This document shows, one piece after another, positions 6,261-24,740 of a DNA stretch of 64,000 bases. The notes under the pieces are model-generated. The model ran no database searches, was not told the origin of the DNA, and saw nothing but the letters and a program-made list of their open reading frames with translations. The number at the start of each line of letters is the position of its first letter. Positions within the stretch are counted from its first letter, which is position 1. Made by a program: the position numbers and the translations under genes. Source of the stretch: Penicillus capitatus (Eukaryota > Plantae > Chlorophyta); contig OZ287719.1 in NCBI GenBank assembly GCA_965649825.1, positions 107,309 through 171,308 on the forward strand, written 5' to 3'.

Positions 6261-6548
6261 GTTGTTCGGCGAAGAGAGTGCGGAAACGGACGGAACTGGT
6301 CGAAGCAGATAGACACGCGCTCAAATGCAACGTCCAAGTAATGATGCCGACATCGAGTCATGATTGCATGTACGTGCGGTTGTCCTTCCCCTATCCGGTT
6401 TACATCGTCAATGATCCTCGTCTCACTCATGCTCACTCGGGAAGAGTTTCTCGACACAACGCTAGCAACGTTTGTTGCCTTCTGCCGGCGATGGCAACGG
6501 AGTCCTTCGTGCTAGTCTTACGGTAATAGAGATCTATTCCTCAGCGAA

Positions 6549-7963: not shown

Positions 7964-9765
7964 TGTCGCGCGGAGGCGCCGAACGAAACGATAACAGCGG
8001 AAGTCTTTACAGGTAAATCAGAGCAAGGCGTTCAGAGGTTCAGATTGCGCATCAAATACCTGCGCGATGACGCGACTTGACGAGGCAGGTGAATCACCCT
8101 AGCCTCAGAGCCAGAGAAAATGGCCTCGGGTGATTGATCCAGCACCGCCCAGGACGTGGACCCATCAGAAACTAGGCAGGGTCACATCGCTCGGCGACAC
8201 CACGCTTCCCGCCAACTCCGAAAAACAAGTAAAGCAAACCCCCACGAAAACAACAGAATGAAATCAGTCTATGCCCGAGGTGAATCGTCGCAGCGCCGAG
8301 AAAATGGTCCATCCCGAAGATGATGATGCTTCTGTGTTTGGTTCCCCCGCTCTCTGCTGCGCATCCGATATCGTCGGATCCACTGACTCGACCGCATTAA
8401 TCCGCGCTTGCGGACAGTCCTTTGCCAGATGCCCCTTGCATCGGCACACATAACATATCCGACCGCGCTTGATGGCACCTCCGCCATCATCTGCCGCATC
8501 GGTTGCTCTCGCCCGTCGTCGGCGCGGGAACCGCCCAATGTCGTGCAAAACGCGCTTCATCTGATGCAACGTCTTCACGGTTCTCCGTCCTTCTGCCGGT
8601 CTTGTCGTCATCAACTCAGCCGTCCTTTCGCCGTTCGTCCGTACGGTTTCCTGCAGAGTCTTCACCTCGGCGGTCAAAGACTGTAGACATGGCACCAAAT
8701 CAGGTGCCGAAATAAACTTTTTCTTCGCCTCTGTAAAGGCGGCATCAGTCTCTCTAAGCTTCTCATGGAGAGAGGAGGCTTCCACGCGTGCCTCGTTTGC
8801 ATCTTGCTGTGCCTTGACGCTGCCTTGCTGCGCCTCGGCAAGATCCTGTTGCAGCCTCGCATTCGCCCCTGACAACCGTTCGTTTTTCACATTCACTTCT
8901 TCCCACGCTTGCGCAGCCAAGGCGTTTTGCTGCAGCCCCTGCTCAAACTCCCGGTACAGCTCGTCGTGGAGATCTTTCCACCGTTCGCTCTCCTTGACCG
9001 CGTTAGCACATGCCGTCTGCGCTTCAGACGCGCTTCGCTGTTCGCGCCGTAGCTGCTGTTGTAGCTGCTCCCTCTCCTCGCGCAGTCGTCTCGTCGTCGC
9101 TTGCAACTCGCGCCTCTCTTGCAGCCTCGGGCAAACGTACTTGACAAAATCGTGCAGCTCTGTTGTGTCGAGCAAATATTTGTCATCGATCACCGCGACG
9201 TAGCAACCCCGATGTGTCGCTCGCACCCTCTGAACGGCAATTCTATCCGGATACAGACTTTCATCTTCATTGAACCAGCGCAGCAGGCTCGGCTCCCAAT
9301 TGGTGACGTCGTAGGACCCCTCCCCTAAGAAGTGACCTTGCTCCGTTCTTCTTTCTCTTCGCCCTTGACTCATCCTTGCTCCTGACTTCTTGAATTTCCT
9401 AGATATGTCTAGAAAATGTCTAGACAGGACTCGACTTCCCCGAAGTAAGCGCTTCAGTGCACACAGCACGCGCGCAACGTCACCGAGACGGAGTTCAAAC
9501 TGAGGAGCGTTATCTCAGCTCCGAAACCATGTCGCGCGGAGGCGCCGAACGAAACGATAACAGCGGAAGTCTTTACAGGTAAATCAGAGCAAGGCGTTCA
9601 GAGGTTCAGATTGCGCATCAAATACCTGCGCGATGACGCGACTTGACGAGGCAGGTGAATCACCCTAGCCTCAGAGCCAGAGAAAATGGCCTCGGGTGAT
9701 TCATCCAGCACCGCCCAGGACGTGGACCCATCAGAAACTAGGCAGGGTCACATCGCTCGGCGACA
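7964..9765 (-). mobile_element. Non-autonomous gag-only LTR retrotransposon (TR-GAG/TRIM-like), 1802 bp, very young
   Basis: 236-bp LTRs TGTCG...CGACA at 7964-8199 and 9530-9765 with one mismatch; 5-bp TSD ACTAC (7959-7963 and 9766-9770); empty site present in the paralog at ~665-670; PBS-like TGGTTTCGGAGC at 9518-9529; purine-rich tract before the 3' LTR; one ORF and no pol. Confidence 0.92.
8264..9469 (-). CDS. Gag-like protein: long coiled coil plus CCHC zinc knuckle
   Basis: 401-aa ORF (first ATG at MSQGRR); heptad-rich LQATTRRLREEREQLQQQL... region; CYVCRCKGHLAKDC matches CX2CX4HX4C. Confidence 0.8.
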   Translation of the reverse strand: MLCALKRLLRGSRVLSRHFLDISRKFKKSGARMSQGRRERRTEQGHFLGEGSYDVTNWEPSLLRWFNEDESLYPDRIAVQRVRATHRGCYVAVIDDKYLLDTTELHDFVKYVCPRLQERRELQATTRRLREEREQLQQQLRREQRSASEAQTACANAVKESERWKDLHDELYREFEQGLQQNALAAQAWEEVNVKNERLSGANARLQQDLAEAQQGSVKAQQDANEARVEASSLHEKLRETDAAFTEAKKKFISAPDLVPCLQSLTAEVKTLQETVRTNGERTAELMTTRPAEGRRTVKTLHQMKRVLHDIGRFPRRRRARATDAADDGGGAIKRGRICYVCRCKGHLAKDCPQARINAVESVDPTISDAQQRAGEPNTEASSSSGWTIFSALRRFTSGID

Positions 9766-10753
9766 ACTACAGAAGAATCCCGCGACAAATGAAACGTCCG
9801 TACAGTTCGTAACACGCTTTCGCAACTTCTGTTCTGTCCTTAAACAGCGCCCAATGGAGTGCAGTCCATCCATCGCTGTCGATCTCCTCGATGTCTGCTC
9901 CGTCGTCCAGCAGAGCCTGTTTACGAGTGGTTCTTCTCTGAGAACCTTGTCACACTGAAGAGACGCACCTCCGCTTATTTCACGTCTCCATCCATCGCCG
10001 TCAGGTGAAAAGGAGTCGTTTCCTGTTTGTCATGTGCATGGAGCTTTGCGTTGCGCTCGAGCGGCATACGTTGTCAGTCTCCGCTGGCGCGCATAACCTA
10101 GATCATGGTTGCACCTGGTGAAGTTCGTCCCTCTTTTGAACGGCGAGGTGTGAGGTAATGTTTCCGCCGTCCACGCCCGCGAACAACTGTGCCCCTTTCA
10201 GACAACGACACATACGTTTTTACGACGTCGCGTGAAGCTAACCGGTGATACCACGGCTGCCGGATGCCACACGGGAAGCGAGCAGAAGACAGAGCCACAC
10301 GTACAGCACACGGCACCTCATGTTTACGCGAACGCGAAACGTCTATGCGGCGCAGAGGCAAAGCGTTTAGCACGGACTGGAATGCGAGGCTTGAAACAAG
10401 GCACTGACAAAGACACGTGGTCGAATTTGTAGGCTGTCTGGACTGTCCTGCGAATGCACCGGACAGCATCCTTGCGTCTCCTCCACGCATTTTCGCGCAG
10501 CATGACTCGGATGACGAAACCTCGAACGTCTTTCTCCACAGCACGGGATGAGGGCTGGGGAACGTTGATTCTCTGGCGAGTCGCTCTGTGTGACGCTGCA
10601 CGGTGTTGTGAGAATTCGCTCGAAAGGGTAAAGGAATGCGCGTTCGCGGTAGGCTGTTCGTTTGTGAAACGTACAGATCGCAATTACAATCCTGTGATCC
10701 AGCGCGTCCATTTTAATGTTCCTTTTTTCTAAGATTATTCTCATCGTATTCCA

Positions 10754-11769
10754 TCAGAACATGGGCCCACCTATCTTTCGCCGAAATGGTTGAAGAAAAT
10801 CTCGATGTACGTTATAGGGGTAAGACCCGTCAGGCAGTTCGATATCCCAACGATGTTCACTACGTTTCTTTGTCAATACACAGGGAGAAACCCACTTAGA
10901 ATAGAGCTTAGAGTCTAAGCGATCAACTAATTTGGAGTTGTACCAAGATACTTCCATGCCCTCGTGAATAGGAACATCTTTGACGTTCTTTGCATATCTC
11001 TTGGCAGACTGCTCGTGTGCTCTTTTGATTCTCTCGTAAGCCAGTTTCCGATCTGTTGCTAATTGCTCATTATTGGCTAGTCTGCCACTTCTATGAATTC
11101 CTTTAAGGAGATATCTTGGACAGAAAAGAGTAGTGCAATGGACTGTTCGATTTATTTCTTGCACACATTCGTTAATGTGTTCGGTCCAGTCTCCTCTTTT
11201 CTCTTTCCAAATTCTCTTTAGACGATTGACGAAGTTCTTGTTGTACGCTTCAATTGTGCCGGCGCTTTTATGTGAATAAGGGGTGTGTGAATGATGTCAA
11301 CACCATGTCACTCACAGAAACTCTCAAACTCTTTTGAGATGAATGCTGCTCCATTGTCACACAGGATACGTTCCGGTGGGCCATTCAATGCAATCCAGTT
11401 CTTCAGCAGCTTTATGATATGAGTAGTAGAGCACGTTTTAGATGCTTGAGCCGTGCCAGACTTGGTAAATGCATCTATTCCGGTTGCGATAAAACGATAA
11501 CCATGCATTCCTCTAGGCAACGGACCGATGAAATCTAAACACAGGGTATGGTTCGGTGTCGGACTATCTGTCATCCCCAAATCTACGTTGTGTTGCAATT
11601 GTCTAAATTGCTGGCAAACATCACAAGTCTGAACGAAACTTTTGACGTCTTCGTAATCATTTTCCCACCGGGACCCATCCGATCTCAAATTCAACCACGT
11701 CTTTCTAATTCCAAAGTGGCCTTTGTGTGCTCTAGCAATCGCTTCCCTTGTTGTACCCCGAGGGTACAA
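10754..11769 (-). pseudogene. Retrotransposon integrase (HHCC, DDE, GPY/F-like C-terminus), interrupted
   Basis: AHKGHFG...CDVC zinc finger; TLCLDFIGP, ILCDNGAAF and SAGTIEAYNK catalytic motifs; KWVSPCVL..WDIELP..NVHRDFLQPF tail; TGA at 11308-11310 and a 1-bp deletion in a C run near 11280. Confidence 0.88.
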
Positions 11770-13556
11770 ACTTGGTAGCCCTGGTGTTTTTGGTTGATTT
11801 CCGAGGTCACTGGATTAGCCACTTTCCATCGACTGAGTACATCTGCAATCGCATTGTCCTTCCCTTCTACGAAACGGAAATTCAGTTTATCTAGTGAAAA
11901 ATGATGCCTCAGCCAACTATACTGTCGTTGTATCCTTAAATCCTTGAACTTGTGCAAAAATGTTGGCTCCTTCAGCCACTCTATTGTAGCCTGGTTATCC
12001 GAATATACGGTAACAGTAAATCCCTTCGTCATGTAAAAACATTGCTTTAAAGCTTCCACGATCCCCATCAATTCCCCCAAAAAACTTCCTACCTTCTCGC
12101 TTGTAGCGAACGAACCAAAAACACATGGTTGCAAAGCTGAGTTAAACAGAACGAATCCAAACTGGTTCAAAGGATTTCCACACCAATCGGTGTACAAATG
12201 AAACGGACCCACCCTCCGTAGTGTCAATCTGTATGCATTGATACACAAATCGGTCACTGTCTCCTGAAAAATCTTATTCGCTTGTTTGTAATCATTATTT
12301 TCTCTTTTAAGAAACGGCTTCAGCTCATTCATGACATATGTGTATTTGTAGCAATATGGTGCGACTTGTTGACACAGCCCCACTGCTCTTTGAACGTCAT
12401 GGCGTGATTCTACCCTTGGCAACTTCTGTAGAATGGCTTGCAGCTTGTGGTATGGGTTGATGGTGCCGTTATTCAGTTCTGTACCCAAAAAACTCACGGA
12501 GCTCCTGAACCAATCACATTTGTGTATGTTGACCGTCAGACCATATTCATCAAAACGCTGTAATAGCAGCCTAGTCTTTTCAAAGAGATCATTCACTGTT
12601 TCTCCACCCACTAGTATATCGTCAAAGTATCTTATCACGTCTAGTCCTTGCAGAATGTGAGTCATTCTATTATTAAAGAGCTCCGGACTTATGTTAACAC
12701 CCTGCGGAAGTCTACGGAAACCATATGTTATCCCCTTCCAATGCAATGCGAAAAACTTAGACAGACTATCGTCTATTGGTATTGAACCGTACCCATGGAC
12801 CACGTCAACAATATTAAAAACAGTCCAACTTGGATCGATTTTACTAATTGCGTCAGCTACCGGGGTTATTGTGCCACCTTGACTCCCTTTTAGATATGTG
12901 TTGATATCTCTGAAGTCAATAGTCGGTCTTATTTTCCCATTTGGTTTTCTCAAAAAGTTCAAAGGTGCCACGACTGCATGAATGGCTTCCTCCGTAGATA
13001 ACACTCGAATGATCTCTTCTTCAAGTAACGACTCTATCTCTTCGGTAATCTCTTTTTCGGTCAGATCGGAAAAATAGTTTTCTCGCCAGCAAGGTTTAGG
13101 CTCAAAATTCCATACTAGATCCCTTTCGCTAACTCTAATACGTAGTAAATTCTCATTCGCTGATCTGACCTTGTCACAAAAAACATTCGGGAAGATGCCT
13201 TTTAACCTCTGTACTAAACTCATCGTATCGTGCTTATCTACTGAACTCGTCACCATTTGTATTTTCTTCGTATCGTTCTTTAATGCATGCTTCACCCCGT
13301 TAACATCGATAATCCAATCTATGTTCACCTTTCCACACACTAACTTCATTTTGCTTGTGATATGCTGTGGAACATCAGTTTGGTTGAAGATTACTATGCT
13401 TATTTGCCCATTTGTGTAAATCTTGCAACGGCAGAATATTCCTTTATTTTGTGTGCAGTCAAAAATTGCTTTCCATTCTGCGTCTTCGGAAAATCTAAAA
13501 GGTAAGATAATTCTTCTACTCTTAAAAGGCCCTAAAACTATACTCCTTCCTGCCAC
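11691..13556 (-). CDS. Reverse transcriptase - RNase H
   Basis: KIRPTIDFRDIN, RRLPQG, YFDD catalytic motif; RNase H motifs LYTDW, GELMGIVEAL, VYSDNQA and GKDNAIADVLSR. Confidence 0.93.
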   Translation of the reverse strand: MAGRSIVLGPFKSRRIILPFRFSEDAEWKAIFDCTQNKGIFCRCKIYTNGQISIVIFNQTDVPQHITSKMKLVCGKVNIDWIIDVNGVKHALKNDTKKIQMVTSSVDKHDTMSLVQRLKGIFPNVFCDKVRSANENLLRIRVSERDLVWNFEPKPCWRENYFSDLTEKEITEEIESLLEEEIIRVLSTEEAIHAVVAPLNFLRKPNGKIRPTIDFRDINTYLKGSQGGTITPVADAISKIDPSWTVFNIVDVVHGYGSIPIDDSLSKFFALHWKGITYGFRRLPQGVNISPELFNNRMTHILQGLDVIRYFDDILVGGETVNDLFEKTRLLLQRFDEYGLTVNIHKCDWFRSSVSFLGTELNNGTINPYHKLQAILQKLPRVESRHDVQRAVGLCQQVAPYCYKYTYVMNELKPFLKRENNDYKQANKIFQETVTDLCINAYRLTLRRVGPFHLYTDWCGNPLNQFGFVLFNSALQPCVFGSFATSEKVGSFLGELMGIVEALKQCFYMTKGFTVTVYSDNQATIEWLKEPTFLHKFKDLRIQRQYSWLRHHFSLDKLNFRFVEGKDNAIADVLSRWKVANPVTSEINQKHQGYQVCTLGVQQGKRLLEHTKATLELERRG

Positions 13557-13812
13557 AAAGATGAGCCACCCATTTCTTTTAAAAGGAAAAAATTCCGGTT
13601 TGATCTCCTCTGTTACATGGAGGCAACCAGCACTTGAGACTTATTTTTGTTTCCTTTTCCCCTTTTTTGTCCAATTGCGACTTATGAGAATTAGCTTTTT
13701 GATTTCACCCCCCTTTTCTCTTCGATTATTTGTCGCCTGCTGAAAAACAGGCTCCTCTGTCAGTTTTTTTGGCAATGATACCTGGTGAATAAGAATCTTT
13801 CTACCGTCACTA

Positions 13813-16527
13813 TCAAAAACACAATCTTGTTCGCAATCTAAACGGAGGCCTAGCGTTTGTAAAGCTTCTAACCCCAAAATTGGCTTTGTCACCCCCTTGC
13901 ATACTAAGAACGAGAGTTTTGTTTTCCTTGTCGCCAAGAGAACAATCTAACGTGACTTCTCCTAAAGGTTTACTCGTGCTATTGTCAAATCCAGTTACTT
14001 CTTTGGTCGACGTTGTTTCTAAGACAAACTGATGGGTTCTAGCCAAGGATTCCGACAAAACATTGGTTTCTGCCCCGGTGTCCAACAAGAACGAAATCTT
14101 GTTGGGAATGCCAGCAATCTTCAAAGGAAGATTGTATCGGATCAACCTTTTTTGCTTTGTCCCCGTTTCTGTATCGGTTGTCTGTACTACGTTTGTCTGA
14201 GAAACACGGTCTTTGGCCACTCTCTTTGTGCTTCTGCGTGGACAATCCCTCGCTGAGTGCCCTCTTGTTTTGCAGTGTTCGCACAAATATCCGTTTCCAT
14301 TTGATTTGACCTGTTGTCTGCCGGGGAACGGAATTCTTGGCGCGCTTCGTCCATCAGATGTAAACTCGTGCAAGATTCTTTGGACCCGTGACCACTCTTG
14401 GGCGTTGTCACAGCCAAGCGTCCCAAGTTGGGCCTGTATTCTCGGATGGGCAATATTGAAAACGCGTTCGAACGCAACCATGTACTTCTCTGGATGTCGG
14501 ATCTTGTCCATTAAAGTCGTCAACCGAATCGAAAACTGGCTAATATCTTCCTTTCCTTTGGGCAACATTCTTTGCAGATCTTGGATCGCTGGACCGAATG
14601 TAACTTGTTGCCTTTTGACTTGGTCGATATGAACATCTGGCTGTATTTCTCCCACTTCTCCTTGTGGTTGCCTTTGCACATGTTCCTGCACTCTCCGATA
14701 CTGCCTCTCAAGTCGTCTGCGGTCATGATCTGTCATACCACCTCCCAGGTGCCTTCTCTCCGCTTCAATCCAGTCATTCATCGATGGGGCTCGTGCCTGC
14801 TGCCTTGGCGCCTGTGGATCCCTTCGAATTCTGTCGTCCAACTCTTCCACTCTTTGATTTAAAGTTTGAAGGCTTGATTCGATCGTGCCTTGCATCATTC
14901 GTTGTTGATTGATTACCCTTTCCTCCATCTCTTCTGCATTTCTCGCTACACCCTCTGTGAGATTGCGAATCTCTTCTCTGACTTCTTGCATCATACGTTC
15001 CTGCCTCGCATCTCCTATAGTCGCGATTGCTTCTTCTCTCTGATGCTGCGGTTGCTGAGGAGGTTGCTGCGGTTGCTGTCCCTCCTTTCTGCCCGTCCAT
15101 AAACCTTTTAGGCCTTCCCAATCGAATCTTAGGCAAAACCATGCGAATCTCATTGTCCACCATAGGCCTCGAACGATGCTTATCGCCATTCTTATCTTCC
15201 TCGCCAAATATGCGAAGATTGATCCAATCCAGTTTATGATCTTCCCTAGGACAATCATGACTCCGAGCAGTTGCCAAGCATTCTTCGTTATCATGACCCC
15301 TCGCAGGGCCGGCCAGCCGAATATATCCCACAAGACTCCAACGGTCCACGTCACCATGTTATCTCGAGCGCCGAGGATCCACGTGACTATTCTCTCTATC
15401 CAGGTCTCTTCTCCTCGGCTAGTTTTCCATCCGTCGTTTATGTCGTCACATGCGCATTCGTCGAGGATGGACGTGATGTTTTCCATGTGGCCTTTGATGC
15501 TGTGCAATGTCTTCTTTATTTCATCTGCCATATCATCCGACATCCTGTCGTCGCTCCCGATCGTTGTCTTCTTGTGTTTATCTCCTCCTTCCGCGGTGTG
15601 ATTCATCAATTTCATGAATTCGTGAGCCGTTCGGAGGAAGACCTTCATGTCTCGTTCCATTTTGGTTTCTTTCTTTGGCATGTTGTTGAGGGTCGCTGCG
15701 GTGAAGGCGGAGATTATCCCGGGTGATGATACTGCTGCGGTAACCCGCCCTCCAACCATCCAATTGACAATTCCGTGTATTCCCGTTGTCAGCACAGACT
15801 GCGTTAACACGTTGAAGGCGCGTTCTTGCAAACCTATCTCTGGCGTAACCTCCACTGGTTCCACTGTGAGCGGCCACTCGGCCTGAGGCAGAGCGTCTTC
15901 AACTCCTTGCATATTGAAGACATCTTCCGGAGTCGTCTCTGTCACTGCCTCTTGTTCCGGTGTTTTCATCGATGCTTGGCTTTCCTCACGCGTTGGCTCT
16001 AGGCTCTCTGTAGATTCTTCTATCGTCACTTCTGGTTCCTCGGCCTTGGCTGGGTCTTCTGCAAACTCTTCGATCGTCGCCTCCGGTTCATCTACCCGGG
16101 CCCTCTGATAATCATCTTTGGAGATCGGCACGGCCTCTTCAAATCTTCGACGTAGGGCCCTTGCGATCGAGACACGGGTTTCGTTGTCTTCGCTATCCCC
16201 GACTATCATTTCATATACTCGATGCCGCGCTGTCTCTAGAAGCTCCTTCGGTCGCCATTCCCTATCGGATGGTGTCCCACTCACTACTAAGAAAAGCAAA
16301 CTGTTTGTGGTTTTTATCGTTTTTCCGTCCCAAGTAAGTGATCCTCCCTCTGACAGAACATTGACAAGAACCTTCGCCTCACTCAGGGTCATTCCCTGTA
16401 GAGCATCGTATACGATGACGCTGTTTGGACATCCACCGATCGCATCAATGATCGTTTTTTGCGTCTGTCCTCCAAGATCCTCGTGTTCTTCACTGTGTCC
16501 CTTTATGCAGTGCATGCAGTCTTCCAT
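13813..16527 (-). CDS. Extended Gag-protease ORF: AAA+-like N-terminal segment, TM helices, coiled coil, capsid-like region, zinc knuckle, aspartic protease
   Basis: CEHCKTRGHSARDC knuckle; FLLDTGAETNVL protease active site; the protease C-terminus (PILGLEAL) continues in ORF 13641..13937 after a frameshift; hydrophobic block WIERIVTWILG...FAWFCL. Confidence 0.85.
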   Translation of the reverse strand: MEDCMHCIKGHSEEHEDLGGQTQKTIIDAIGGCPNSVIVYDALQGMTLSEAKVLVNVLSEGGSLTWDGKTIKTTNSLLFLVVSGTPSDREWRPKELLETARHRVYEMIVGDSEDNETRVSIARALRRRFEEAVPISKDDYQRARVDEPEATIEEFAEDPAKAEEPEVTIEESTESLEPTREESQASMKTPEQEAVTETTPEDVFNMQGVEDALPQAEWPLTVEPVEVTPEIGLQERAFNVLTQSVLTTGIHGIVNWMVGGRVTAAVSSPGIISAFTAATLNNMPKKETKMERDMKVFLRTAHEFMKLMNHTAEGGDKHKKTTIGSDDRMSDDMADEIKKTLHSIKGHMENITSILDECACDDINDGWKTSRGEETWIERIVTWILGARDNMVTWTVGVLWDIFGWPALRGVMITKNAWQLLGVMIVLGKIINWIGSIFAYLARKIRMAISIVRGLWWTMRFAWFCLRFDWEGLKGLWTGRKEGQQPQQPPQQPQHQREEAIATIGDARQERMMQEVREEIRNLTEGVARNAEEMEERVINQQRMMQGTIESSLQTLNQRVEELDDRIRRDPQAPRQQARAPSMNDWIEAERRHLGGGMTDHDRRRLERQYRRVQEHVQRQPQGEVGEIQPDVHIDQVKRQQVTFGPAIQDLQRMLPKGKEDISQFSIRLTTLMDKIRHPEKYMVAFERVFNIAHPRIQAQLGTLGCDNAQEWSRVQRILHEFTSDGRSAPRIPFPGRQQVKSNGNGYLCEHCKTRGHSARDCPRRSTKRVAKDRVSQTNVVQTTDTETGTKQKRLIRYNLPLKIAGIPNKISFLLDTGAETNVLSESLARTHQFVLETTSTKEVTGFDNSTSKPLGEVTLDCSLGDKENKTLVLSMQGGDKANFGVRSFTNARPPFRLRTRLCF

Positions 16528-16844
16528 GTGCGATTTTTTTCGGTGCTCATTGTTCTGAGCCGTTCCGAGATGCTGTCACACTTGTTTGTTGTGCAGTACA
16601 AGATTACTGCCACGGCCTTTCTCTCTCCTGTTTCGTGGAGCAGTTGTAGATCCAGATTTCTTTTTGTACCGAAAATGTAGTCGTCTGTCCAGTCGCCTTG
16701 TCCGTGTACGAAGTGTCGGATGGTCTCAAGTGTGGTCTTTCTGACATCTGAAAGGTCAGCAGATTGGTGACCCCAAAGTGCAGTCACCCAGAATAGGCTC
16801 AATCCGAAGAGGAGCAGGCCATGCAAACCTCGCTCCGAAACCAT
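16503..16844 (-). CDS. Upstream segment of the Gypsy polyprotein (signal-peptide-like start, first part of the AAA+-like fold), joined to the next ORF by a -1 shift at an A7 run
   Basis: The ATG spans the LTR/PBS junction; LLLFGLSLFWVTALWG hydrophobic leader; TIRHFVHGQ; G-AAA-AAA-AT at ~16534-16541 links it to ORF 13813..16527. Confidence 0.55.
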   Translation of the reverse strand: MVSERGLHGLLLFGLSLFWVTALWGHQSADLSDVRKTTLETIRHFVHGQGDWTDDYIFGTKRNLDLQLLHETGERKAVAVILYCTTNKCDSISERLRTMSTEKNRTWKTACTA

Positions 16845-16878
16845 GTTGTGAGAATTCGCTCGAAAGGGTAAAGGAATG

Positions 16879-17125
16879 TGTCGCCGGTCGGCCGAGCAGA
16901 AAACAATACACAGCGGAAGACTCTTACATTAATCGGAGCAAGGTCTTGAGTGTTCAGAATGTGTCCTTATGTATGCGCGCGGTGACGCGACGTTCCTAGG
17001 CAGGTGAATCATCGTGCTGTCAAAACCACAGAAAAGGGCCCTTTGTCCCGTAGGACAAGACAGGCAGCGTTCCTTGGCACGGATAACCCCCGCAGAACAA
17101 GACAGTGTCACATCGCTCGGCGACA
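16879..17125 (-). mobile_element. LTR related to the TR-GAG LTR family, inserted into the Gypsy 5' LTR
   Basis: TGTCG...CATCGCTCGGCGACA; shares CAGCGGAAG, GGCAGGTGAATCA and the last 19 bp with the LTR at 7964-8199; no TSD visible. Confidence 0.75.
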
Positions 17126-17127
17126 CT

Positions 17128-17403
17128 CGTCGTCGTCGGCCAGGGCGAATTCCCGATCGAACACACACGGTTGCACAAGGAAAAGCTTACAAAACGTCAT
17201 GAGCCCCAGGGCTTTTATCCGGTCCACGCGATGGACAGGTGAGTCACCCACCTCTCAGCACCATAGAACGAGGACCCCTCATGGCCCCCGTCTCCCTTGA
17301 CACGACTCCTGAGTACCCCTTTCAAGCCCGACCCCCTCCCCACCGAGGCAGTCCCATCGCTGCAGCGAGGCCATCACATCGCCAACTCCAAATCTTGGCG
17401 ACA
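17128..17403 (-). mobile_element. Second, more diverged LTR-like segment abutting the previous LTR
   Basis: Starts CGTCGTCGTCGGCC (cf. TGTCGCCGGTCGGCC), contains GACAGGTGAGTCACC (cf. GGCAGGTGAATCACC) and ends GGCGACA exactly where host-paralog homology resumes (17404). Confidence 0.45.
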
Positions 17404-17839
17404 TGTCCATCGATCCATTCTCCTCTTCGTATTCTTTGCTCGTCGACTTCGCATAGGGCAGTCCATCGTGGAAATGCCCTCCGCTGGCCACCTGTCCATC
17501 TGCGTTCGTCCGTGCCAGGACGTAAAATCAAGATCAATAGCGACCATGAAGGCGCGTGGTTGAATCATCCAGTATGTGTCTGCGCTGTCATACAATTGTC
17601 GGTCACATCAAGATAGCAAGCAATCTCGTCGAATGGTTCTGTAGACGCGCACCACGCTTTGTTTTCTAGCCTTGCATGCCGACGCAACAGACATGACGTG
17701 GGGAGTAAGTATCAAGACAGTAACGAATCTGATAGAAAGAAAAACCTCTATCGCCCAATCAGCGACCTGTCGGAGGATACTTTGGACGCGCCTTTTAGTG
17801 ACAACTAAGTCAGAATCCAGGCTTTTATCGTGCGAAAGC

Positions 17840-17911
17840 GCCCTCGTGGTGTAATGGTTGGCGCACTTGAAGTTTTCTCAAGAGGCGTGGGTTCGAATCC
17901 CGCCGAGGCGC
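17840..17911 (+). pseudogene. tRNA-like element (pseudo-tRNA or SINE head) with intact Pol III A/B boxes
   Basis: A box TGGTGTAATGG; B box GGTTCGAATCC; D stem GUGU/GCGC; anticodon stem CUUGA/UCAAG; T stem GUGGG/CCCGC. The anticodon loop AGUUUUC is non-canonical and the acceptor stem is imperfect. Confidence 0.6.
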
Positions 17912-18595
17912 CCCGTGAGTCACTCGGGTGATAATGACTGGCCGGAGGGTGAAGCGGCGACTCATCATGATCAAGAAAATCAGAAGATTGTGCAATTAAG
18001 ACGCGGGTCAAGTCCAGACCGGAGCATGCGGTTATACGTGAGGTGGACGACGAATCGTCGCAGACGCTGTGAGACATGTGAAGCGACGGATGGAAGCACG
18101 AGTCTTCTAATTGAACGATTGAACGATGAATTGACAATGGGCGTCGGGTTGCTGATATGCTAATTAAGCGCATGCAACTGTAAAAATCCAAATCGAATCG
18201 AATCGTGCGAAAGCCATGGTGAGCCGAACTAACGCGCGTAGCGGAGACGAAACAAAACGGCAACACGCAAAGAATTGATAAAATTACAGTTCGGCCGTTT
18301 CCCCGGAAGCTCTCGCCGATCACACATACGATGAACAAAAGCACAAGGCGCGTCTGAGCCTCTTATTTCTTCGGTGTACCTTGACTCGTTTGGCGCAGAA
18401 CGTCCCTCGTCTTCCGTCCTCGCGTTGCACGCAGGTCGCCTCGGAGTCTTCTCACGTCTCCTCGAGAGTCCATCCATTCCGTCCACTGCAGCCAGCTGGT
18501 TCACGCCAAAAAAAAGAAAAAAGGCAAAAAGATAGAGAAAGATGAAGGTGAGTGGATGCAGCAACCGACGCAGTCTTTTGCGCCGGCAGCTTTAG

Positions 18596-18665
18596 GGCTA
18601 GGGTGACTGCTCAGTCAAGGTGACCGAACAGTTTCGACGGCGCCACCCGTCTCATCAGACCCCTT
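18596..18665 (-). ncRNA. Hammerhead ribozyme HHR-1 (type I)
   Basis: Minus strand: AAGGGGU CUGAUGA GACGG-GUGGCG-CCGUC GAA ACUGUUCGGUCA-CCU-UGACUGAGCAGU C / ACCCU AGCC. 12-bp stem III; GUC cleavage triplet; predicted cut between 18605 and 18604. Confidence 0.88.
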
Positions 18666-18765: not shown

Positions 18766-19086
18766 TAATCACGAAATGAAACGAAATGAAATGCCATTTG
18801 GTGGGGTGGTAATCACGAAATGAAATGCCATTTGGTGGGGTGGTAATCACGAAATGAAATGCCATTTGGTGGGGTGGTAATCACGAAATGAAATGCCATT
18901 TGGTGGGGTGGTAATCACGAAATGAAATGCCATTTGGTGGGGTGGTAATCACGAAATGAAATGCCATTTGGTGGGGTGGTAATCACGAAATGAAATGCCA
19001 TTTGGTGGGGTGGTAATCACGAAATGAAATGCCATTTGGTGGGGTGGTAATCACGAAATGAAATGCCATTTGGTGGGGTAATCACG
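18766..19086. repeat. Minisatellite, 34-bp unit TAATCACGAAATGAAATGCCATTTGGTGGGGTGG, 9 copies
   Basis: GCCATTTGGTGGGG recurs at 18793, 18827, 18861, 18895, 18929, 18963, 18997, 19031 and 19065; no spacers. Confidence 0.95.
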
Positions 19087-19658
19087 AGGATGTCCTTCCT
19101 TCCGGGATTCCTCAACCAGGTCGAAGGGAAGGCCGCGCCTACAAGAGACGACCCTCACCCCGCCTTCGGGACTAACGGGTGGGCCCGACGCCGTAGAAGC
19201 CGCTCAACAGTCCGCGCCACAACCGTCGCACGATTGCCGCCATCGACGGCAGCGTCTCATGCGCTGTTGTATCATTCTTTCGACGGACAACCGAACGACG
19301 ATTCGACGTAGTGGGACCGGAGCTGCGCAACTGTGGGGGAGTATCTCCCGGAAAGAAGGGCCATCCGAGGATGTCCCCCCGATCCGAGATTCCTCAACCA
19401 GGTCGAAGCAAAGGCCGTCTACAAGAGACGACCCTCACCCCGCCTTCGGGACTAACGGGTGGGCCCGACGCCGCAGAAGCCGCTCAACGGCCCCCGCCAC
19501 AACCGCCGCACGATTGCCGCCGTTCTCGGCAGCGTCTCATGCGCTGTGGTAAGGTACTTCAATAGTGCAAAACTTCAATATGACGGAACAATCGAGGACG
19601 CGTTCGACGCATCCGGACTGGAGCTGCGCAACTACGGGGGAGTATCTCCCGGAAAGAA
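19086..19658. repeat. Two diverged direct repeats of ~280-290 bp
   Basis: Both start GAGGATGTCC (19086, 19367), share CTACAAGAGACGACCCTCACCCCGCCTTCGGGACTAACGGGTGGGCCCGACGCCG and end GGGGGAGTATCTCCCGGAAAGAA. Confidence 0.9.
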
Positions 19659-19679: not shown

Positions 19680-19965
19680 ATCACTTATATAACCCTTCAG
19701 ATGATGTGACAGCGTCACATCATTTTGTCGCGCAATCAGCCAATCACGACGCGATTTCGGAATACTAACCGTCGGAAAAAGAAGCTGGGAGGAAGGCGTC
19801 GATTCAGCCGATAGCCAATCACGTTGCAGTATCGGAATATTCCATCTGTCACATCAGAATATTCCATCTGTCGCATCAGAATATTCCTATCGAATCAGCC
19901 ACTCAGCGCGCACCTTTCAAAGCGACGTTGACAGGGTCACATCACCATCCAAGTATTTAAGGCCT
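19680..19965. promoter_or_regulatory. Putative bidirectional Pol II promoter
   Basis: Leftward TATATAA (plus strand TTATATA at ~19685-19691); CCAAT boxes at 19740 and 19815; 22-bp repeat with GAATATTC palindrome at 19835-19887; rightward TATTTAA at 19954-19960. Confidence 0.4.
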
Positions 19966-20356
19966 ACCATGGCGCGCATTTCGTCTTTTGTCGTTAGGGC
20001 GGTTCTACTGGTGGGTTCTTGCTTCCGGGTTTCGGCTCGGAACATAGAATGCCAAATACCGGGTCAGTGCTGCCAGGCTATAAGCCGCCGACCCGGCCCG
20101 TCGGTGTTGCGAGGCATCCCTTCGGGAGGTGCTGCTGACCATCACCTTCCCGCCATGGTTGGCGCAAGCAAAGGTCGTTGGACGCTGGATTCGGAGTGTT
20201 CAAGGCGTGTTGAACAGGCGGCGCGTAGCGGGTGCCTAAGACCATCACACCTACTCCGAAATTTGCGCTCCGCCGCACGCTTAAGACATACGGCTCCACT
20301 GCGCTAATGCCGCGCCGCCTTCGGGTGACGCGTCACTGGTTCAGTGGGGAGGGTGG

Positions 20357-20465
20357 GCTTGGGGTCATCCTAGCCAATCCGGATCTTTCCGGATCGCGTC
20401 GAGGGTTTTGGTGCCACGACGCGAAGGGGTCTGACGAGACGGGTGGCGCCGTCGAAACCCTAAGT
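20357..20465 (+). ncRNA. Hammerhead ribozyme HHR-2 (type III, stem I closed by a branched loop)
   Basis: GCUUGGGGU C / AUCCU AGCC ... AAGGGGU CUGACGA GACGG-GUGGCG-CCGUC GAA ACCCUAAGU. 9-bp stem III GCUUGGGGU/ACCCUAAGU; loop I holds hairpins AUCCGGA/UCCGGAU and CGCGUCG/CGACGCG; predicted cut after 20366. Confidence 0.85.
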
Positions 20466-20639
20466 CTTCTGTTTACGTGTCGTCCGAACCGCGCGCGCTC
20501 GAATTACGCGTTCCATTCACGCTCTCCGTGTCGGAGCTTAGCCAATGTCTAGCACACGGGGTAGATCCGTCGACCGCGTCCGCGGTTTTTCTGTTCCGAC
20601 GAGTCGATGTCGCGTTCTGGTTCGCGCCGAGACGCGGGA

Positions 20640-20716
20640 AAGGGGTCTGATGAGACGGATGGCGCCGTCGAAACCGCAGAGTGCTGCTCCGTTGCATTCG
20701 GCGGTCGCCCTAGCCA
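20640..20716 (+). ncRNA. Hammerhead ribozyme HHR-3 (type I)
   Basis: AAGGGGU CUGAUGA GACGG-AUGGCG-CCGUC GAA ACCGC-A-GAGUGC-loop-GCAUUC-G-GCGGU C / GCCCU AGCC; predicted cut after 20706. Confidence 0.88.
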
Positions 20717-21756
20717 GTCGTTTTATTTTCTGTCTCTTTTTCGCCTGTATGTGTCTATGTTTCTGCCCACGTGCGTTAACACCACCTGACCTTTACAACC
20801 GATTACAAGGCAAAAAGCATATGTGTGTATGTATACATGCTCCCCACTTTCGTTCGGTTTGTTTATTCATCTGCCGTCGTGTCCACTCAGTCTTTTCAGC
20901 GAATGCTGTCCTATCGAGACGTCGTCTTCTGTCGTCGACGCCGCGCCACATTAGACAGACTTTGTCAGCAAAGCGACCGCTGCCAGATGCAACACACCTG
21001 CAGGAAAGTGTCACTGTCGCGTCATTAGGCACAGAACCCCTCTCACCGTCGTGACCAACACCGTCTTGCGTTTTGCTAGGATGCCTGCACAGTGTCCTTC
21101 GTTGTCCGTCAATGCACACAGGAGCACCGTGATGACAAGGATGAAGCGAAATGTTCTTTGGGCGTTCATGTCCATGCCGCAGAGGTTGTAAAACATCCAC
21201 AGTTCCATCATCGAAAGAGTGGTGAATGCCCAAGTAGTCTGCGAAGACCAAATCGATGTTAGTCACTTGATCGAATGCTTTTCGTCTGTGTCGAAGTTTT
21301 TCGACTATTCGTGAAGCGTGGGGCAGACATATCACAAGTTTCCTTGCTCTGTGCCCGGCACATCAATCGGCAGAATCAGGGGCCGCCGGTCTTTGTTTTG
21401 TTTCGCGATAGTTTTTCGGTCTGTCTGCTTTGTCTCGTTACCAGTCTGACTTGAGCTATGCACGAACTTTTGAGTCTTGTCAAGTGTAGCGTGTCATATT
21501 GTTTACGTCGGTATAGGGCGTGTGCAAACGTCCAGTCAGCGCGAATCGGCGCGGACAGCGTGCTTGCGGGAAAAGACTATCAATCTAGATATCGCACACA
21601 TGTGCGACGGGCGGACAACACCTGAATAGAGTGTGGAGAACCGACATATATAGTCAATCGTATGCACATAATAACCCAATCGTTGGGCGCGCGAAACAAA
21701 ACTCATGTGAAATATAGAGGATGGATGGATGCCATTCATTACATACCAACGTTTCG

Positions 21757-23142: not shown

Positions 23143-24414
23143 CTATCTTCTGGATCTCTTTCCAGAATCCCTAGATGACCCCTCCGCCTCACCGACGCCC
23201 TTCCGCTTTGCATCGGCCGCTTTCTTTATGTCCGACATCCGCTGTTCACGAGCCCGTGTGCTCCGTAACCCGTAGCGTCGCTTTGCCTCTCTTTCCCTTG
23301 ATACCTCTTCATCGTAAGATGATTCCCAAGAACGACGTTTGGAACCGCGGCCCCTAGATACCGGCTCTTCCACTTCCATAACCGTGTCCCCGTCGTCGTC
23401 CACGTTCCCTTCTTCTCCGTCGACGACTGTCGGTATTCCTTGCACCACGTTCACAGGCGTCCCCTCGGCGCCCTCCTCGACGTCCGCCGGCGTCCCGTCG
23501 GCGGTTGACGCCATCGGTATGCCTTGCACGACGATCACGGGTGTCCCGTCGGCGATCTCCACGACGTCCGCCGGCGTCCCGTCGACGACTGTCGGTATGC
23601 CTTGCACGACGATCACGGGTGTCCCGTCGGCGATCTCCACGACGTCCGCCGGTGTCCCGTCGACGATTGACACCACCGGTATGCCTTGCACGACGATCAC
23701 GGGTGTCCCGTCGGCGATCTCCACGACGTCCGCCGGCGTCCCGTCGACGACTGTCGGTATTCCTTGCACCACGTTCACAGGCGTCCCATCGGCGATCTCC
23801 ACGACGTCCGCCGGCGTCCCGTCGACGACTGTCGGTATTCCTTGCACCACGTTCACAGGCGTCCCATCGGCGATCTCCACGACGTCCGCCGGCGCCTCGC
23901 TGGTGCCCGGCACAGCCAGGCTTATCAAGAAGCTCACGAAATTATGGGCCAAGTCCACGAAGTCCTCTGATGCACGGCGTTCGTCGGGCGCTGTGCTCAT
24001 GAGGAAATCAACTGTTGAACTCAAGTATTCCACGAAACGCAGCGTTCTTAGGAATTCGTAGTCGTCGTTGGCGTCGGCGACCAAGTAGTTCGACACCGCA
24101 GCTTGCCATAAAAGGTTAGCATAGTCCGCCCAGGTGCGAAGTTGCACATCACTAGGGCCAGGTTCGTCCGCTCCTCCTGCTACACGTCGCGGAGCCAGTT
24201 GCCGGCTGACGTGAAGGACCGCCAGAAATCTATCTGGGTCTGTCCCTTCATACGGTGATCCTATGTCCTCCTCGCCGGGCACGTATGCAGTAAACGTGTC
24301 AAAAAGAGCCGACTGAAGGGCGTTGAAGAACACGCGGTACCCCTCACGTTCGACCAGTTGGTTGTCCAACGCTTGCAGAACGCTATGAATAAGCGACGAC
24401 ACGGACGAACTCAT
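23143..24414 (-). CDS. Orphan protein (~423 aa from MSSSVSS) with six 26-aa tandem repeats and a basic, NLS-like tail
   Basis: ORF 23143..24573; repeat GTPADVVEIADGTPV(N/I)VVQGIPTVVD with a 78-bp period; C-terminus RGSKRR...KRKG...GKRSRR; no recognised domain. Confidence 0.6.
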   Translation of the reverse strand: MSSSVSSLIHSVLQALDNQLVEREGYRVFFNALQSALFDTFTAYVPGEEDIGSPYEGTDPDRFLAVLHVSRQLAPRRVAGGADEPGPSDVQLRTWADYANLLWQAAVSNYLVADANDDYEFLRTLRFVEYLSSTVDFLMSTAPDERRASEDFVDLAHNFVSFLISLAVPGTSEAPADVVEIADGTPVNVVQGIPTVVDGTPADVVEIADGTPVNVVQGIPTVVDGTPADVVEIADGTPVIVVQGIPVVSIVDGTPADVVEIADGTPVIVVQGIPTVVDGTPADVVEIADGTPVIVVQGIPMASTADGTPADVEEGAEGTPVNVVQGIPTVVDGEEGNVDDDGDTVMEVEEPVSRGRGSKRRSWESSYDEEVSREREAKRRYGLRSTRAREQRMSDIKKAADAKRKGVGEAEGSSRDSGKRSRR

Positions 24415-24566
24415 CGTTGTTTTTTTTGCAGAAAAATCCGAGAACCAAACGCCAATAGCGCTGAGGGCAGTTTCGGCAAAAAGACGCGAAACGGCAAACG
24501 GCAAATACGCGGAATAATTGTACGGCGGTACGCTTTTATACTCGCGAAATGCAATTACGTAAAATC

Positions 24567-24740
24567 TTCTCATCTACGGTTATGTCACGGAACTCGCATC
24601 GCGACGGCTGACGGCGGCGAACCTTCTCAGCTACGGTTTTGTCCGTCCCGGAACTTTCTCATCTACGGTTATGTCACGGAACTCGCATCGCGACGGCTGA
24701 CGGCGGCGAACCTTCTCAGCTACGGTTACGTCCCGGAACT
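24567..24740. repeat. Two 89-bp direct repeats upstream of the orphan ORF, followed by a CCAAT motif and an (ATCA)n tract
   Basis: TTCTCATCTACGGTTATGTCACGGAACTCGCATCGCGACGGCTGACGGCGGCGAACCTTCTCAGCTACGGTT at 24567 and 24656; ATTGGCTGATTCGAC at ~24757; ATCAATCAATC at ~24830-24851. Confidence 0.85.

What the first reader, a model, noticed from the sequence alone, without database searches (positions are those of the whole stretch)
20357..20716. Same ribozyme in two circular permutations (type III next to type I)
Seen: HHR-2 has its GUC/AUCCUAGCC strand 5' of the core (type III, stem I capped by a two-hairpin branched loop). HHR-1 and HHR-3 have it 3' of the core (type I). Core and loop II are essentially identical. 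Inference: this is a snapshot of permutation arising from tandem or circular templates. Hammerhead families in one element usually keep one topology.
Basis: partly seen in the sequence, partly recalled or inferred. Interest (0 to 1): 0.8.

Follow-up and report, generated by a model that had tools for sequence, protein, structure and literature searches.

The report
One hammerhead ribozyme, two connectivities
Three intact copies of one self-cutting hammerhead RNA lie within about 2 kb of an uncultured eukaryote's genome, and in a decayed two-unit tandem repeat one copy pairs with the cut site upstream of it (type III) and the next with the site downstream (type I), which shows on a single locus how duplication can rewire a ribozyme.

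Summary
The window holds exactly three hammerhead cores with a near-identical 35-nt catalytic segment, AAGGGGUCUGAYGAGACGGRUGGCGCCGUCGAAAC. Each has a 12-nt substrate strand, GUC|NYCCUAGCC.

- **HHR-1** (minus strand, 18665-18596) and **HHR-3** (20640-20715) are type I.
- **HHR-2** uses the substrate strand upstream of its core. It cuts after C20366, has a long-range 11-bp helix III (20355-65 with 20457-67), and its stem I is closed by two hairpins. That makes it type III.
- No alternative cut site fits any of the three cores.
- Helix III has compensatory changes at 8 of 11 pairs across the three copies.
- Rfam does not call any of them at its curated thresholds.

HHR-2 and HHR-3 form a diverged head-to-tail array, S1-L1-C1-R1-S2(dead)-L2-C2-R2-S3. 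A decayed middle substrate strand lies at 20530-46, and the segments upstream of the two cores are homologous. In such an array each core is flanked by substrate strands on both sides, so both topologies are available from the start. The direction of change and any circular template remain unshown.

The most likely action is cuts at 20366 and 20706 that release a 340-nt RNA carrying both cores, as in retrozymes. However, that RNA is not unusually structured, and I found no further copies. It is a new variant of a known kind, of moderate interest.

The parts
18596..18665 (-). HHR-1, type I hammerhead. Stem I 5' strand 18663-18659; CUGAUGA 18658-18652; stem II and loop II 18651-18636; GAA 18635-18633; helix III hairpin 18632-18606 (12 bp); cut after C18605; stem I 3' strand 18604-18600; AGCC 18599-18596.
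   Evidence: sub-threshold RAGATH-1-hammerhead alignment with the same architecture
20355..20375 (+). S1, the substrate strand of HHR-2. Helix III 5' strand 20355-20365; GUC 20364-66, cut after C20366; stem I strand AUCCU 20367-71; AGCC 20372-75.
20376..20423 (+). L1, the branched cap of HHR-2 stem I. Hairpin 1 is 20377-20394 and hairpin 2 is 20395-20423. The other assembly has A20416 changed to T, which adds one base pair to hairpin 2.
20424..20467 (+). C1, the catalytic strand of HHR-2. AAGGGGU 20424-30; CUGACGA 20431-37; stem II and loop II 20438-53; GAA 20454-56; helix III 3' strand 20457-67. Together with S1 it forms a type III hammerhead.
20530..20546 (+). S2, a decayed middle substrate strand, GUC|GGAGCUUAGCCAAU. 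Its stem I pairing is lost, and it shares UAGCCAAU with S1.
20547..20639 (+). L2, the segment upstream of the HHR-3 core. It is homologous to L1 and carries insertions.
20640..20715 (+). HHR-3, type I hammerhead. AAGGGGU 20640-46; CUGAUGA 20647-53; stem II and loop II 20654-69; GAA 20670-72; helix III hairpin 20673-20705; cut after C20706; stem I strand GCCCU 20707-11; AGCC 20712-15.
20367..20706 (+). The 340-nt RNA predicted to be released by the two cuts. It would carry both catalytic cores, a 5'-OH end and a 2',3'-cyclic phosphate end.
   Evidence: inference; fold
20722..20788 (+). Pyrimidine-rich tail after HHR-3, weakly similar to the tail after HHR-1.
   Evidence: z 3.6, 3 of 500 shuffles as good; low-complexity caveat
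18493..18546 (-). Pyrimidine-rich tail after HHR-1, weakly similar to the tail after HHR-3.

Best explanation
The locus carries three intact members of one hammerhead ribozyme family in an uncultured eukaryote. Its nearest named protein relatives are chlorophyte algae, at no more than 47% identity.

Two members lie head to tail on the plus strand as an old, diverged two-unit tandem array: S1-L1-C1-R1-S2(dead)-L2-C2-R2-S3. S is the substrate strand and C is the catalytic strand with stem II. In a tandem array every catalytic strand has a substrate strand on both sides. The three-way junction can therefore be closed with either neighbour.
- C1 closes it with the upstream S1. Stem I is capped by L1 and helix III is an open 11-bp long-range helix. 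This is type III.
- C2 closes it with the downstream S3. Helix III is a hairpin. This is type I.
- The internal S2 has decayed.

On a plus-strand transcript, cuts after C20366 and C20706 would release a 340-nt RNA. It would keep both catalytic cores and have 5'-OH and 2',3'-cyclic phosphate ends. Such ends are the substrate of RtcB-type ligases, so the RNA could be circularised as retrozyme RNAs are. Equally, the pair would act as a self-removing spacer that leaves only 14 nt and 9 nt of ribozyme sequence on the upstream and downstream RNAs.

HHR-1 is a solitary type I copy on the other strand, pointing away from the array.

**Shown:** the motifs, their connectivity, the unit homology and the compensatory helix III changes.
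**Inferred:** self-cleavage, transcription, release of the 340-nt RNA and circularisation.
For: - **Three cores, all defining positions present.** There are three cores and no others. All three have CUGANGA, G10.1-C11.1, GAA, A15.1-U16.1 and C17.
- **One compatible cut site per core**.
- **Specific helix III partners.** The S1-C1 and S3-C2 duplexes are each -17.3 kcal/mol. Composition-matched shuffles matched them in 0 of 1000 and 1 of 1000 trials. The cross pairs S1-C2 and S3-C1 are no better than shuffles.
- **Accessible folds.** Hammerhead folds lie within 0.8-2.5 kcal/mol of the minimum free energy.
- **Covariation.** On an alignment with HHR-2 permuted in silico, 97% of cells pair. Eight of 11 helix III pairs carry changes on both sides. 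No shuffle or slid register comes close.
- **Conservation confined to the ribozyme.** Similarity between the copies is limited to the 35-nt core and the 12-nt substrate strand, while the flanks are unalignable. This argues for selection on the ribozyme.
- **Tandem origin.** There is a relic S2, the upstream segments are homologous (z about 3.9), and there is no relic core outside the array.
- **Other assembly.** The same locus in ENA ERZ25074695 is identical in the ribozymes. Its one substitution within the HHR-2/HHR-3 array adds a base pair to hairpin 2.
- **Possible promoter.** Two AGCCAATCACG boxes and a TATTTAAGG lie 400-630 nt upstream of S1 on the plus strand.
- **Published precedent.** Tandem hammerhead repeats of 150-450 bp give circular RNAs through RtcB (PMC7229834). 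Tandem duplication has been proposed as a route to circular permutation (PMC10085705).
Against: - There is no experimental or transcript evidence.
- The 340-nt RNA is not unusually self-paired when folded as a circle (z -0.58), unlike retrozyme and viroid-like circles.
- Its GC content is 61%, whereas animal retrozymes are below 50%.
- No other copy of the family turned up in the window, in JGI metagenomes, IMG/VR or GTDB genomes, or through a peptide-profile search of 5.8 billion proteins (inconclusive). High copy number, a retrozyme hallmark, is therefore unsupported.
- Rfam scores are below the gathering thresholds.
- Covariation rests on three sequences, and the structure was derived from those same sequences.
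- The stem I to loop II contact (GCC with GGC) is invariant and so cannot be tested.
Confidence: 0.55

Rival explanations
1. The hammerheads are host RNA-processing elements and not the remains of a mobile repeat. HHR-2 would cut 59 nt after the stop codon of the plus-strand ORF 19969-20307, forming or destabilising its 3' end. HHR-1 would cut within a roughly 3.5-kb intron of a minus-strand two-exon gene for a small secreted protein. The two topologies would then be selected so that little ribozyme sequence remains on the flanking RNAs.
For: - ORF 19969-20307 has a signal-peptide-like N-terminus and lies downstream of CCAAT- and TATA-like motifs.
- Exon-like blocks at 21169-21047 and 17503-17404 have a paralogue at 3106-2985 and 2360-2261 with a short intron and no hammerhead.
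- The family appears to be low copy.
- Intronic and 3'-UTR hammerheads are known in amniotes and rodents (PMC3088659).
Against: - Neither gene model is verified.
- The paralogue's exon 1 shows mostly non-synonymous differences, so it may be a pseudogene.
- This reading does not explain the tandem unit homology or the relic S2.
- A single cut would be enough for 3'-end formation.
Confidence: 0.2
2. The hammerheads are 3'-terminal modules of a non-autonomous element of the Penelope-like or Terminon kind. It would have inserted as an inverted truncated copy (HHR-1) plus a partial tandem (HHR-2 and HHR-3). The C-rich sequence after the cut would act like the reverse-complement telomere repeats of telomere-attaching elements.
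For: - The two type I copies point outward.
- Each is followed by a weakly similar pyrimidine-rich tail.
- Combined inverted and tandem insertions are typical of Penelope-like elements (PMC8557442).
- The sequence after the HHR-1 cut, ACCCTAGCCCTAAAG, resembles C-strand telomere repeats. Terminons place such repeats directly after their hammerhead (PMC6431247).
Against: - No Penelope-type reverse transcriptase or GIY-YIG endonuclease appeared among the long ORFs I tested.
These have 11-12 bp.
- The copies share nothing beyond the ribozyme and a low-complexity tail.
- The window contains no telomere repeats, so the organism's telomere repeat is unknown.
- CCUAGCC is explained by stem I plus the loop II contact.
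Confidence: 0.15
3. The array is a dead relic. HHR-2 is an orphaned core whose pairing with the upstream strand has no function, and nothing is cleaved in vivo.
For: - The middle substrate strand has already decayed.
- Rfam does not recognise the motifs.
- There is no expression evidence.
Against: - All core positions are intact in all three copies while the flanks have diverged beyond alignment.
- An 11-bp helix III adjoining a perfect 12-nt substrate motif is not expected by chance.
- Helix III differs between the copies yet stays complementary.
Confidence: 0.1

Closest known systems
Non-LTR retrozymes and hammerhead satellite repeats (animals; type I hammerheads reported in protist satellites)
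   Same: Head-to-tail units of a few hundred bp, here 166-216 bp, each with a hammerhead. Two cuts would release an RNA with ends suited to RtcB circularisation. The size falls in the reported 170-400 nt range.
   Different: Only two diverged units are present. One ribozyme is type III and the middle site is dead. GC is 61%, against below 50% for animal retrozymes. The excised RNA is not strongly self-paired, and no other genomic copies were found.
Plant LTR retrozymes (type III hammerheads in LTRs)
   Same: HHR-2 has type III connectivity, and the excised RNA would begin just after the cut with most of a ribozyme at its 5' end.
   Different: There are no LTRs of about 350 bp. No match to the tRNA-Met primer-binding-site sequence I recalled lies near the array. 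I did not look for a polypurine tract. The 3' partner is type I. The interval is 340 nt, against 600-1000 nt.
Pseudoknot-stabilised hammerheads (Perreault et al. 2011, PMC3088659)
   Same: A strand just beyond stem I (GCC or GCCA) can pair with loop II (GGC or UGGC). That paper predicts such a contact for about 40% of hammerheads.
   Different: Here the contact is 3-4 bp and invariant in all three copies, so it is untested.
Hammerheads of Penelope-like elements and Terminons
   Same: Inverted-plus-tandem arrangement, and a C-rich telomere-like sequence after the ribozyme.
   Different: No Penelope-type reverse transcriptase or endonuclease was found. Helix III is long and stable, not minimal.
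Permutation by duplication, as proposed for permuted ribozymes and proteins (PMC10085705)
   Same: A tandem duplicate in which one copy uses the partner strand from the neighbouring unit is exactly the intermediate that model requires.
   Different: That paper offers it as a model. This is a single natural locus consistent with it, and the direction of change is unresolved.

Membership tests
Hammerhead ribozyme (any type) | Conserved core C3-U4-G5-A6-N7-G8-A9, then G12-A13-A14, and a U16.1-H17 cut site | tested here: met
   All three copies have CUGA(U/C)GA, GAA and GUC.
Hammerhead ribozyme (any type) | Three helices around the core, with G10.1-C11.1 and A15.1-U16.1 closing pairs | tested here: met
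   Stem I is 5 bp, stem II 5 bp and helix III 11-12 positions, one of them an A·G mismatch in HHR-3. Overall 97% of cells pair, and helix III covaries at 8 of 11 pairs.
Hammerhead ribozyme (any type) | Tertiary contact between stem I and loop II | tested here: inconclusive
   GCC(A) after stem I can pair with (U)GGC of loop II in all three copies, but the bases never vary (helix 3).
Hammerhead ribozyme (any type) | Self-cleavage at the predicted site | not testable with these tools
   Needs in vitro transcription.
Rfam hammerhead families (RF00163, RF00008, RF02276, RF03152 and others) | Score at or above the family's gathering threshold | tested here: not met
   No hit at gathering thresholds. 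HHR-1 scores 21.2 bits against RAGATH-1-hammerhead (threshold 56.3) and 16.8 bits against Hammerhead_3 (threshold 48.5). HHR-2 and HHR-3 give no hammerhead hit at E up to 10. I attribute this to the long helix III and the stem I insert, but did not test that.
Type III connectivity (for HHR-2) | Order substrate strand, then CUGANGA, then GAAA; stems I and II closed; helix III open | tested here: met
   Cut site C20366 lies 64 nt upstream of C3. Helix III pairs 20355-65 with 20457-67. No downstream site fits.
Type I connectivity (for HHR-1 and HHR-3) | Order CUGANGA, then GAAA, then substrate strand; helix III a hairpin; stem I open | tested here: met
Non-LTR retrozyme | Tandem units of 150-450 bp, each carrying a type I hammerhead | tested here: not met
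   Two units of suitable size are present, but one ribozyme is type III and the internal site is dead.
Non-LTR retrozyme | Many genomic copies | tested here: inconclusive
   No further copies in 64 kb or in the public collections I could scan. The full assembly was not searchable.
Non-LTR retrozyme | Highly self-paired monomer RNA, expressed as a circle | tested here: not met
   Circular minimum free energy -134.6 kcal/mol, z -0.58 against shuffles. Expression is not testable here.
LTR retrozyme | Type III hammerheads within LTRs, with a tRNA-Met primer binding site, polypurine tract and 4-bp target duplications | tested here: not met
   No LTR-sized repeats. No match near the array to the primer-binding-site sequence, which I recalled from memory. 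Polypurine tract and target duplications were not examined.
Penelope-like element or Terminon | Penelope-type reverse transcriptase (with or without GIY-YIG endonuclease) associated with the hammerhead-bearing repeat | tested here: not met
   The only reverse transcriptase in the window belongs to an LTR element with an aspartic protease at about 8-17 kb. There is no long ORF between the hammerheads.

The most novel reading that the evidence does not exclude
The type III plus type I pair is a selected, self-excising two-ribozyme cassette. Both catalysts face inward, so they stay on a 340-nt RNA that is circularised in vivo. That would define a retrozyme-like class in a possibly green-lineage protist that bridges the plant type III and animal type I classes. 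It would also give a natural worked example of ribozyme permutation by tandem duplication.
Probability: 0.2. Interest if true: 0.7.

Novelty: new variant of a known kind. Interest (0 to 1): 0.5.

Why it matters
Hammerhead types I, II and III are usually treated as separate classes, and retrozymes are even classified by type. How one type turns into another has only been modelled.

This locus shows members that are clearly homologous: they share stem I, stem II, loop II and the putative tertiary strand. They differ only in which neighbouring copy of the substrate strand they pair with, and a decayed third strand still marks the tandem origin.

If the predicted cuts occur, it is also a compact natural design for releasing an RNA that carries both its ribozymes, or for separating two RNAs with minimal scars. 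In addition, it shows that current Rfam models miss hammerheads with long helix III or large stem I inserts.

Tried and rejected
1. **Fourth core-pattern match at 9500-9527.** CTGAGGAG...CGAAAC has no stem II. It overlaps a 12-nt match (2 mismatches) to a recalled primer-binding-site sequence, TGGTTTCGGAGC at 9518-29, which recurs at 16832-43. I read it as a likely primer binding site of an LTR retrotransposon. It is not a hammerhead.
2. **ATCACCCTAGCC at 8093 and 9659.** These lie in a 236-bp repeat with no core nearby. Rejected.
3. **Exact substrate motif at 38706-17, minus strand.** It lies inside an ORF with no core and no helix III partner. Treated as chance.
4. **Public collections.** I scanned JGI metagenomes, IMG/VR and GTDB genomes for the core. 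There were two hits, both chance matches in bacterial coding sequence.
5. **Peptide-profile search.** I tried to find other copies through spurious ORFs that read through the core, using a profile of KGSDETGGAVET with X flanks, tested locally first. One candidate was found and nothing scored. This is inconclusive and used the last protein search.
6. **Retrotransposon ORF look-up.** An exact look-up of a retrotransposon ORF, meant to sample more of the genome, found no record.
7. **Rod-like structure of the 340-nt RNA.** Not found.
8. **Relic cores outside the array.** None upstream of S1 or downstream of S3.
9. **Similarity between the HHR-1 upstream region and L1 or L2.** None.
10. **Telomere-type tandem repeats in the window.** None.
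11. **Literature search for the core sequence.** No paper holds it.
12. **Target-site duplication (CATCTGC) around the 3.4-kb block.** I considered this and dropped it. The motif is part of the flank that is homologous to the paralogue.

Full report
**What is there**

The 64-kb window is eukaryotic. It has intron-like gene structure, a Ty3/gypsy-type retrotransposon at about 8-17 kb on the minus strand, and multi-exon-looking genes for RRM and PMP/beta-helix proteins. The same genome occurs in an ENA metagenome assembly, ERZ25074695, contig ctg339938_19x_l. It is 99.96% identical across the locus. The nearest named protein relatives of its RRM protein are chlorophyte algae. One cluster, 47% identical, contains a Hariotina protein, and a Monoraphidium protein is 33% identical. 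The organism is therefore unidentified.

A hammerhead core pattern (CUGANGAG, stem II, CGAAAC) matches four times against 0.14 expected. Three of these share a 33-35-nt segment, AAGGGGUCUGAYGAGACGGRUGGCGCCGUCGAAAC: 18631-18663 on the minus strand, and 20426-20458 and 20642-20674 on the plus strand. The fourth, at 9500-9527, has no stem II. It overlaps a probable primer binding site of an LTR retrotransposon. A scan allowing up to 7 mismatches and a generic core scan found no further related core. The 12-nt substrate motif GUC|NYCCUAGCC occurs four times against 0.03 expected, and three of those lie next to the cores.

**Checking the observation**

For each core I scored every UH dinucleotide within 400 nt for contiguous stem I and helix III pairing. 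Each core has exactly one good site.

| Copy | Cut site | Position relative to core | Stem I | Helix III |
|---|---|---|---|---|
| HHR-1 | C18605 | downstream | 5 bp | 12 bp hairpin |
| HHR-3 | C20706 | downstream | 5 bp | 5 bp, continued after an A·G mismatch by 6 more |
| HHR-2 | C20366 | upstream | 5 bp | 11 contiguous pairs, 20355-65 with 20457-67 |

It lies only 7 nt after A15.1, too close to leave room for a helix III hairpin.

Duplex energies single out the assigned partners. S1-C1 and S3-C2 are each -17.3 kcal/mol, matched by shuffles in 0 of 1000 and 1 of 1000 trials. S1-C2 and S3-C1 are no better than shuffles.

Folds constrained to the hammerhead structure are within 0.8, 2.5 and 1.5 kcal/mol of the unconstrained minimum for HHR-2, HHR-3 and HHR-1.

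I moved the upstream strand of HHR-2 to the 3' side in silico and aligned the three copies. On that alignment 97% of cells pair. Helix III shows changes on both sides at 8 of its 11 pairs. No shuffle reaches the observed values, and slid registers collapse to 28-51% pairing. The caveat is that there are only three sequences and the structure was read from them.

**Detection by Rfam**

Rfam does not call these motifs. There is nothing at gathering thresholds and nothing for HHR-2 or HHR-3 even at E up to 10. HHR-1 gets only sub-threshold hits: RAGATH-1-hammerhead at 21 bits and Hammerhead_3 at 17 bits. The RAGATH-1 alignment has exactly the type I architecture proposed here.

**What the array looks like**

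Similarity among the three copies is confined to the catalytic segment and the substrate strand. The flanks do not align.

Between the two plus-strand cores lies a third, decayed substrate-like strand, GUC|GGAGCUUAGCCAAU, at 20530-46. It shares UAGCCAAU with S1 but has lost stem I pairing. The three GUC sites are 166 and 174 nt apart, and the cores are 216 nt apart.

The segments upstream of the two cores align from the substrate strand through the hairpin region (z about 3.9 against shuffles). The segments downstream of the cores do not. No relic core lies upstream of S1 or downstream of S3.

The array is therefore S1-L1-C1-R1-S2(dead)-L2-C2-R2-S3: two diverged units plus a terminal substrate strand. 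The helix III flank of S2 still pairs with the downstream core C2 (-9.9 kcal/mol, anchored at the junction, p about 0.12). It does not pair with C1 (-0.8 kcal/mol). This is a weak hint that both neighbours were once usable.

In a homogeneous tandem array every catalytic strand is complementary to the substrate strand on either side. Type I and type III are then two readings of the same repeat. After divergence, unit 1 kept the upstream partner and unit 2 the downstream one.

The ribozyme parts are intact while everything else has diverged, and helix III differs between copies yet stays paired. Both facts argue for selection on cleavage and not for a recent accident.

In the other assembly the one substitution I saw within the HHR-2/HHR-3 array, A20416 to T, turns an A·A mismatch into a base pair in hairpin 2.

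**How it most likely works**

Two AGCCAATCACG boxes (19738 and 19813), 22-bp repeats and a TATTTAAGG (19954) lie upstream on the plus strand. From these I infer a Pol II promoter.

On such a transcript HHR-2 would cut at its own 5' edge and HHR-3 at its own 3' edge. That would release a 340-nt RNA (20367-20706) with 5'-OH and 2',3'-cyclic phosphate ends and both cores on board. Such ends are substrates for RtcB ligases, which circularise retrozyme RNAs (PMC7229834).

After circularisation the junction GGCGGUC|AUCCUAGCC would rebuild a complete HHR-3. It would not rebuild HHR-2, because the helix III 5' strand of HHR-2 is left on the upstream fragment.

The same geometry also leaves nearly scarless flanking RNAs, so a role as a self-removing spacer is equally compatible.

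Several points weigh against a classical retrozyme:
- The 340-nt RNA is not unusually structured (circular fold z -0.58).
- Its GC content is 61%, against 52% for the window.
- I found no other copy of the family.

**HHR-1 and the wider context**

HHR-1 lies about 1.7 kb away on the other strand and points outward. A 34-bp minisatellite and two repeats of about 280 bp lie between it and the array.

The 70-100 nt after the cuts of HHR-1 and HHR-3 are weakly similar pyrimidine-rich tails ending in GCGTNA..ACCASCTG (z 3.6; low-complexity caveat). This arrangement, together with the inverted-plus-tandem layout, recalls insertions of Penelope-like elements (PMC8557442). The sequence after the HHR-1 cut, ACCCTAGCCCTAAAG, recalls the reverse-complement telomere repeats placed after Terminon hammerheads (PMC6431247).

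Against that reading:
- No Penelope-type reverse transcriptase is present.
- Helix III is long, whereas as I recall hammerheads of Penelope-like elements are minimal.
- The window holds no telomere repeats.

The whole 3.4-kb block sits between two short segments, 17404-17503 and 20870-21188. These have a paralogous pair only 443 bp apart at 2261-2360 and 2803-3125. They read as exon 2, and as exon 1 plus the start of the intron, of a small secreted-protein gene on the minus strand. The hammerhead block may therefore be an insertion into that intron. Alternatively, the hammerheads may process host transcripts. I could not define insertion boundaries.

**Comparison with what is known**

The ribozymes meet every sequence and pairing criterion of the hammerhead class that can be tested in silico. 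They fail Rfam's score thresholds, and activity is untested.

The likely stem I to loop II contact is a short pseudoknot, GCC(A) with (U)GGC. It is of the kind described by Perreault et al. (PMC3088659), but it is invariant here.

The array works like a non-LTR retrozyme or hammerhead satellite dimer. It does not meet that family's definition, which requires type I in every unit, many copies and a self-paired circle. It is not an LTR retrozyme either.

The literature classifies retrozymes by hammerhead type: plants type III, animals type I. It offers tandem duplication only as a model for permutation. I found no report of this core sequence.

**Verdict**

The finding is a new variant of a known kind, resting on a single locus without expression or activity data. 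Interest 0.5.

Noticed in passing
window 8000-17130 (minus strand): LTR retrotransposon(s) with gag/aspartic protease (ORF 13813-16527) and reverse transcriptase (ORF 11691-13556). Primer-binding-site-like TGGTTTCGGAGC at 16832-43 and again at 9518-29. LTR-like repeats at 7964-8199, 9530-9765 and 16977-17126. The second primer binding site suggests a nested or tandem element.
   Followed up: partly
window 17840-17910 (+): A tRNA-like sequence scores 36.9 bits in Rfam, but ARAGORN does not call it. The anticodon loop reads AGUUUUC, without the usual U33, so it may be a pseudogene or tRNA-derived sequence. It lies inside the 3.4-kb block that holds the hammerheads.
   Followed up: no
window 18781-19079; L004 8085-8540: A 34-bp minisatellite, 8.8 perfect copies in the window, is about 140 bp longer and made of variant units in the other assembly. 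It is a length-polymorphic repeat directly upstream of HHR-1.
   Followed up: partly
window 19085-19357 and 19366-19658: Two direct repeats of about 280 bp (81% identical) lie between HHR-1 and the promoter-like region.
   Followed up: no
window 19738-19962 and 19969-20307 (+): Two AGCCAATCACG (CCAAT-box-like) motifs, 2.6 copies of a 22-bp repeat and TATTTAAGG lie just before an ATG. That ATG opens a 112-aa ORF with a signal-peptide-like N-terminus, which ends 59 nt before the HHR-2 cut site.
   Followed up: partly
window 21169-21047 and 17503-17404 versus 3106-2985 and 2360-2261 (minus strand): Paralogous pieces of a putative two-exon gene for a small secreted protein (MNAQRTFRFILVITVLLCAL...). 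The intron is about 625 nt in one copy and about 3.5 kb, containing all three hammerheads, in the other. Exon 1 differences are mostly non-synonymous.
   Followed up: partly
window about 24252-24257; L001 10323-15959: The other assembly carries a 5.6-kb Ty3/gypsy insertion (reverse transcriptase, RNase H, integrase) inside ORF 23143-24573, a protein with tandem 26-aa repeats. The insertion is absent from the window, so it is polymorphic and the element was recently active.
   Followed up: partly
window 38706-38717 (-): A fourth exact match to the substrate motif (GTCTTCCTAGCC) lies inside a 440-aa ORF. It has no hammerhead core and no helix III partner nearby. It is probably chance, although only 0.03 matches are expected.
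   Followed up: partly
window 18604-18590 (-): The sequence right after the HHR-1 cut, ACCCTAGCCCTAAAG, resembles C-strand telomere repeats (CCCTAAA / CCCTAA). The window holds no telomere arrays for comparison.
   Followed up: partly
window 42117-59349 (minus strand): A cluster of large ORFs with Chlamydia-PMP repeats and right-handed beta-helix domains (42117-43502, 51964-53094, 58213-59349) plus DUF7630 (49872-51575). It appears to be a paralogous surface-protein-like gene family.
   Followed up: no
window 1-7140 versus L001 482-7623: In the other assembly a 99.2% identical copy of window 1-7140 follows the equivalent of window 26793. This indicates a segmental duplication of about 27 kb or a structural difference between the two assemblies.
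   Followed up: no
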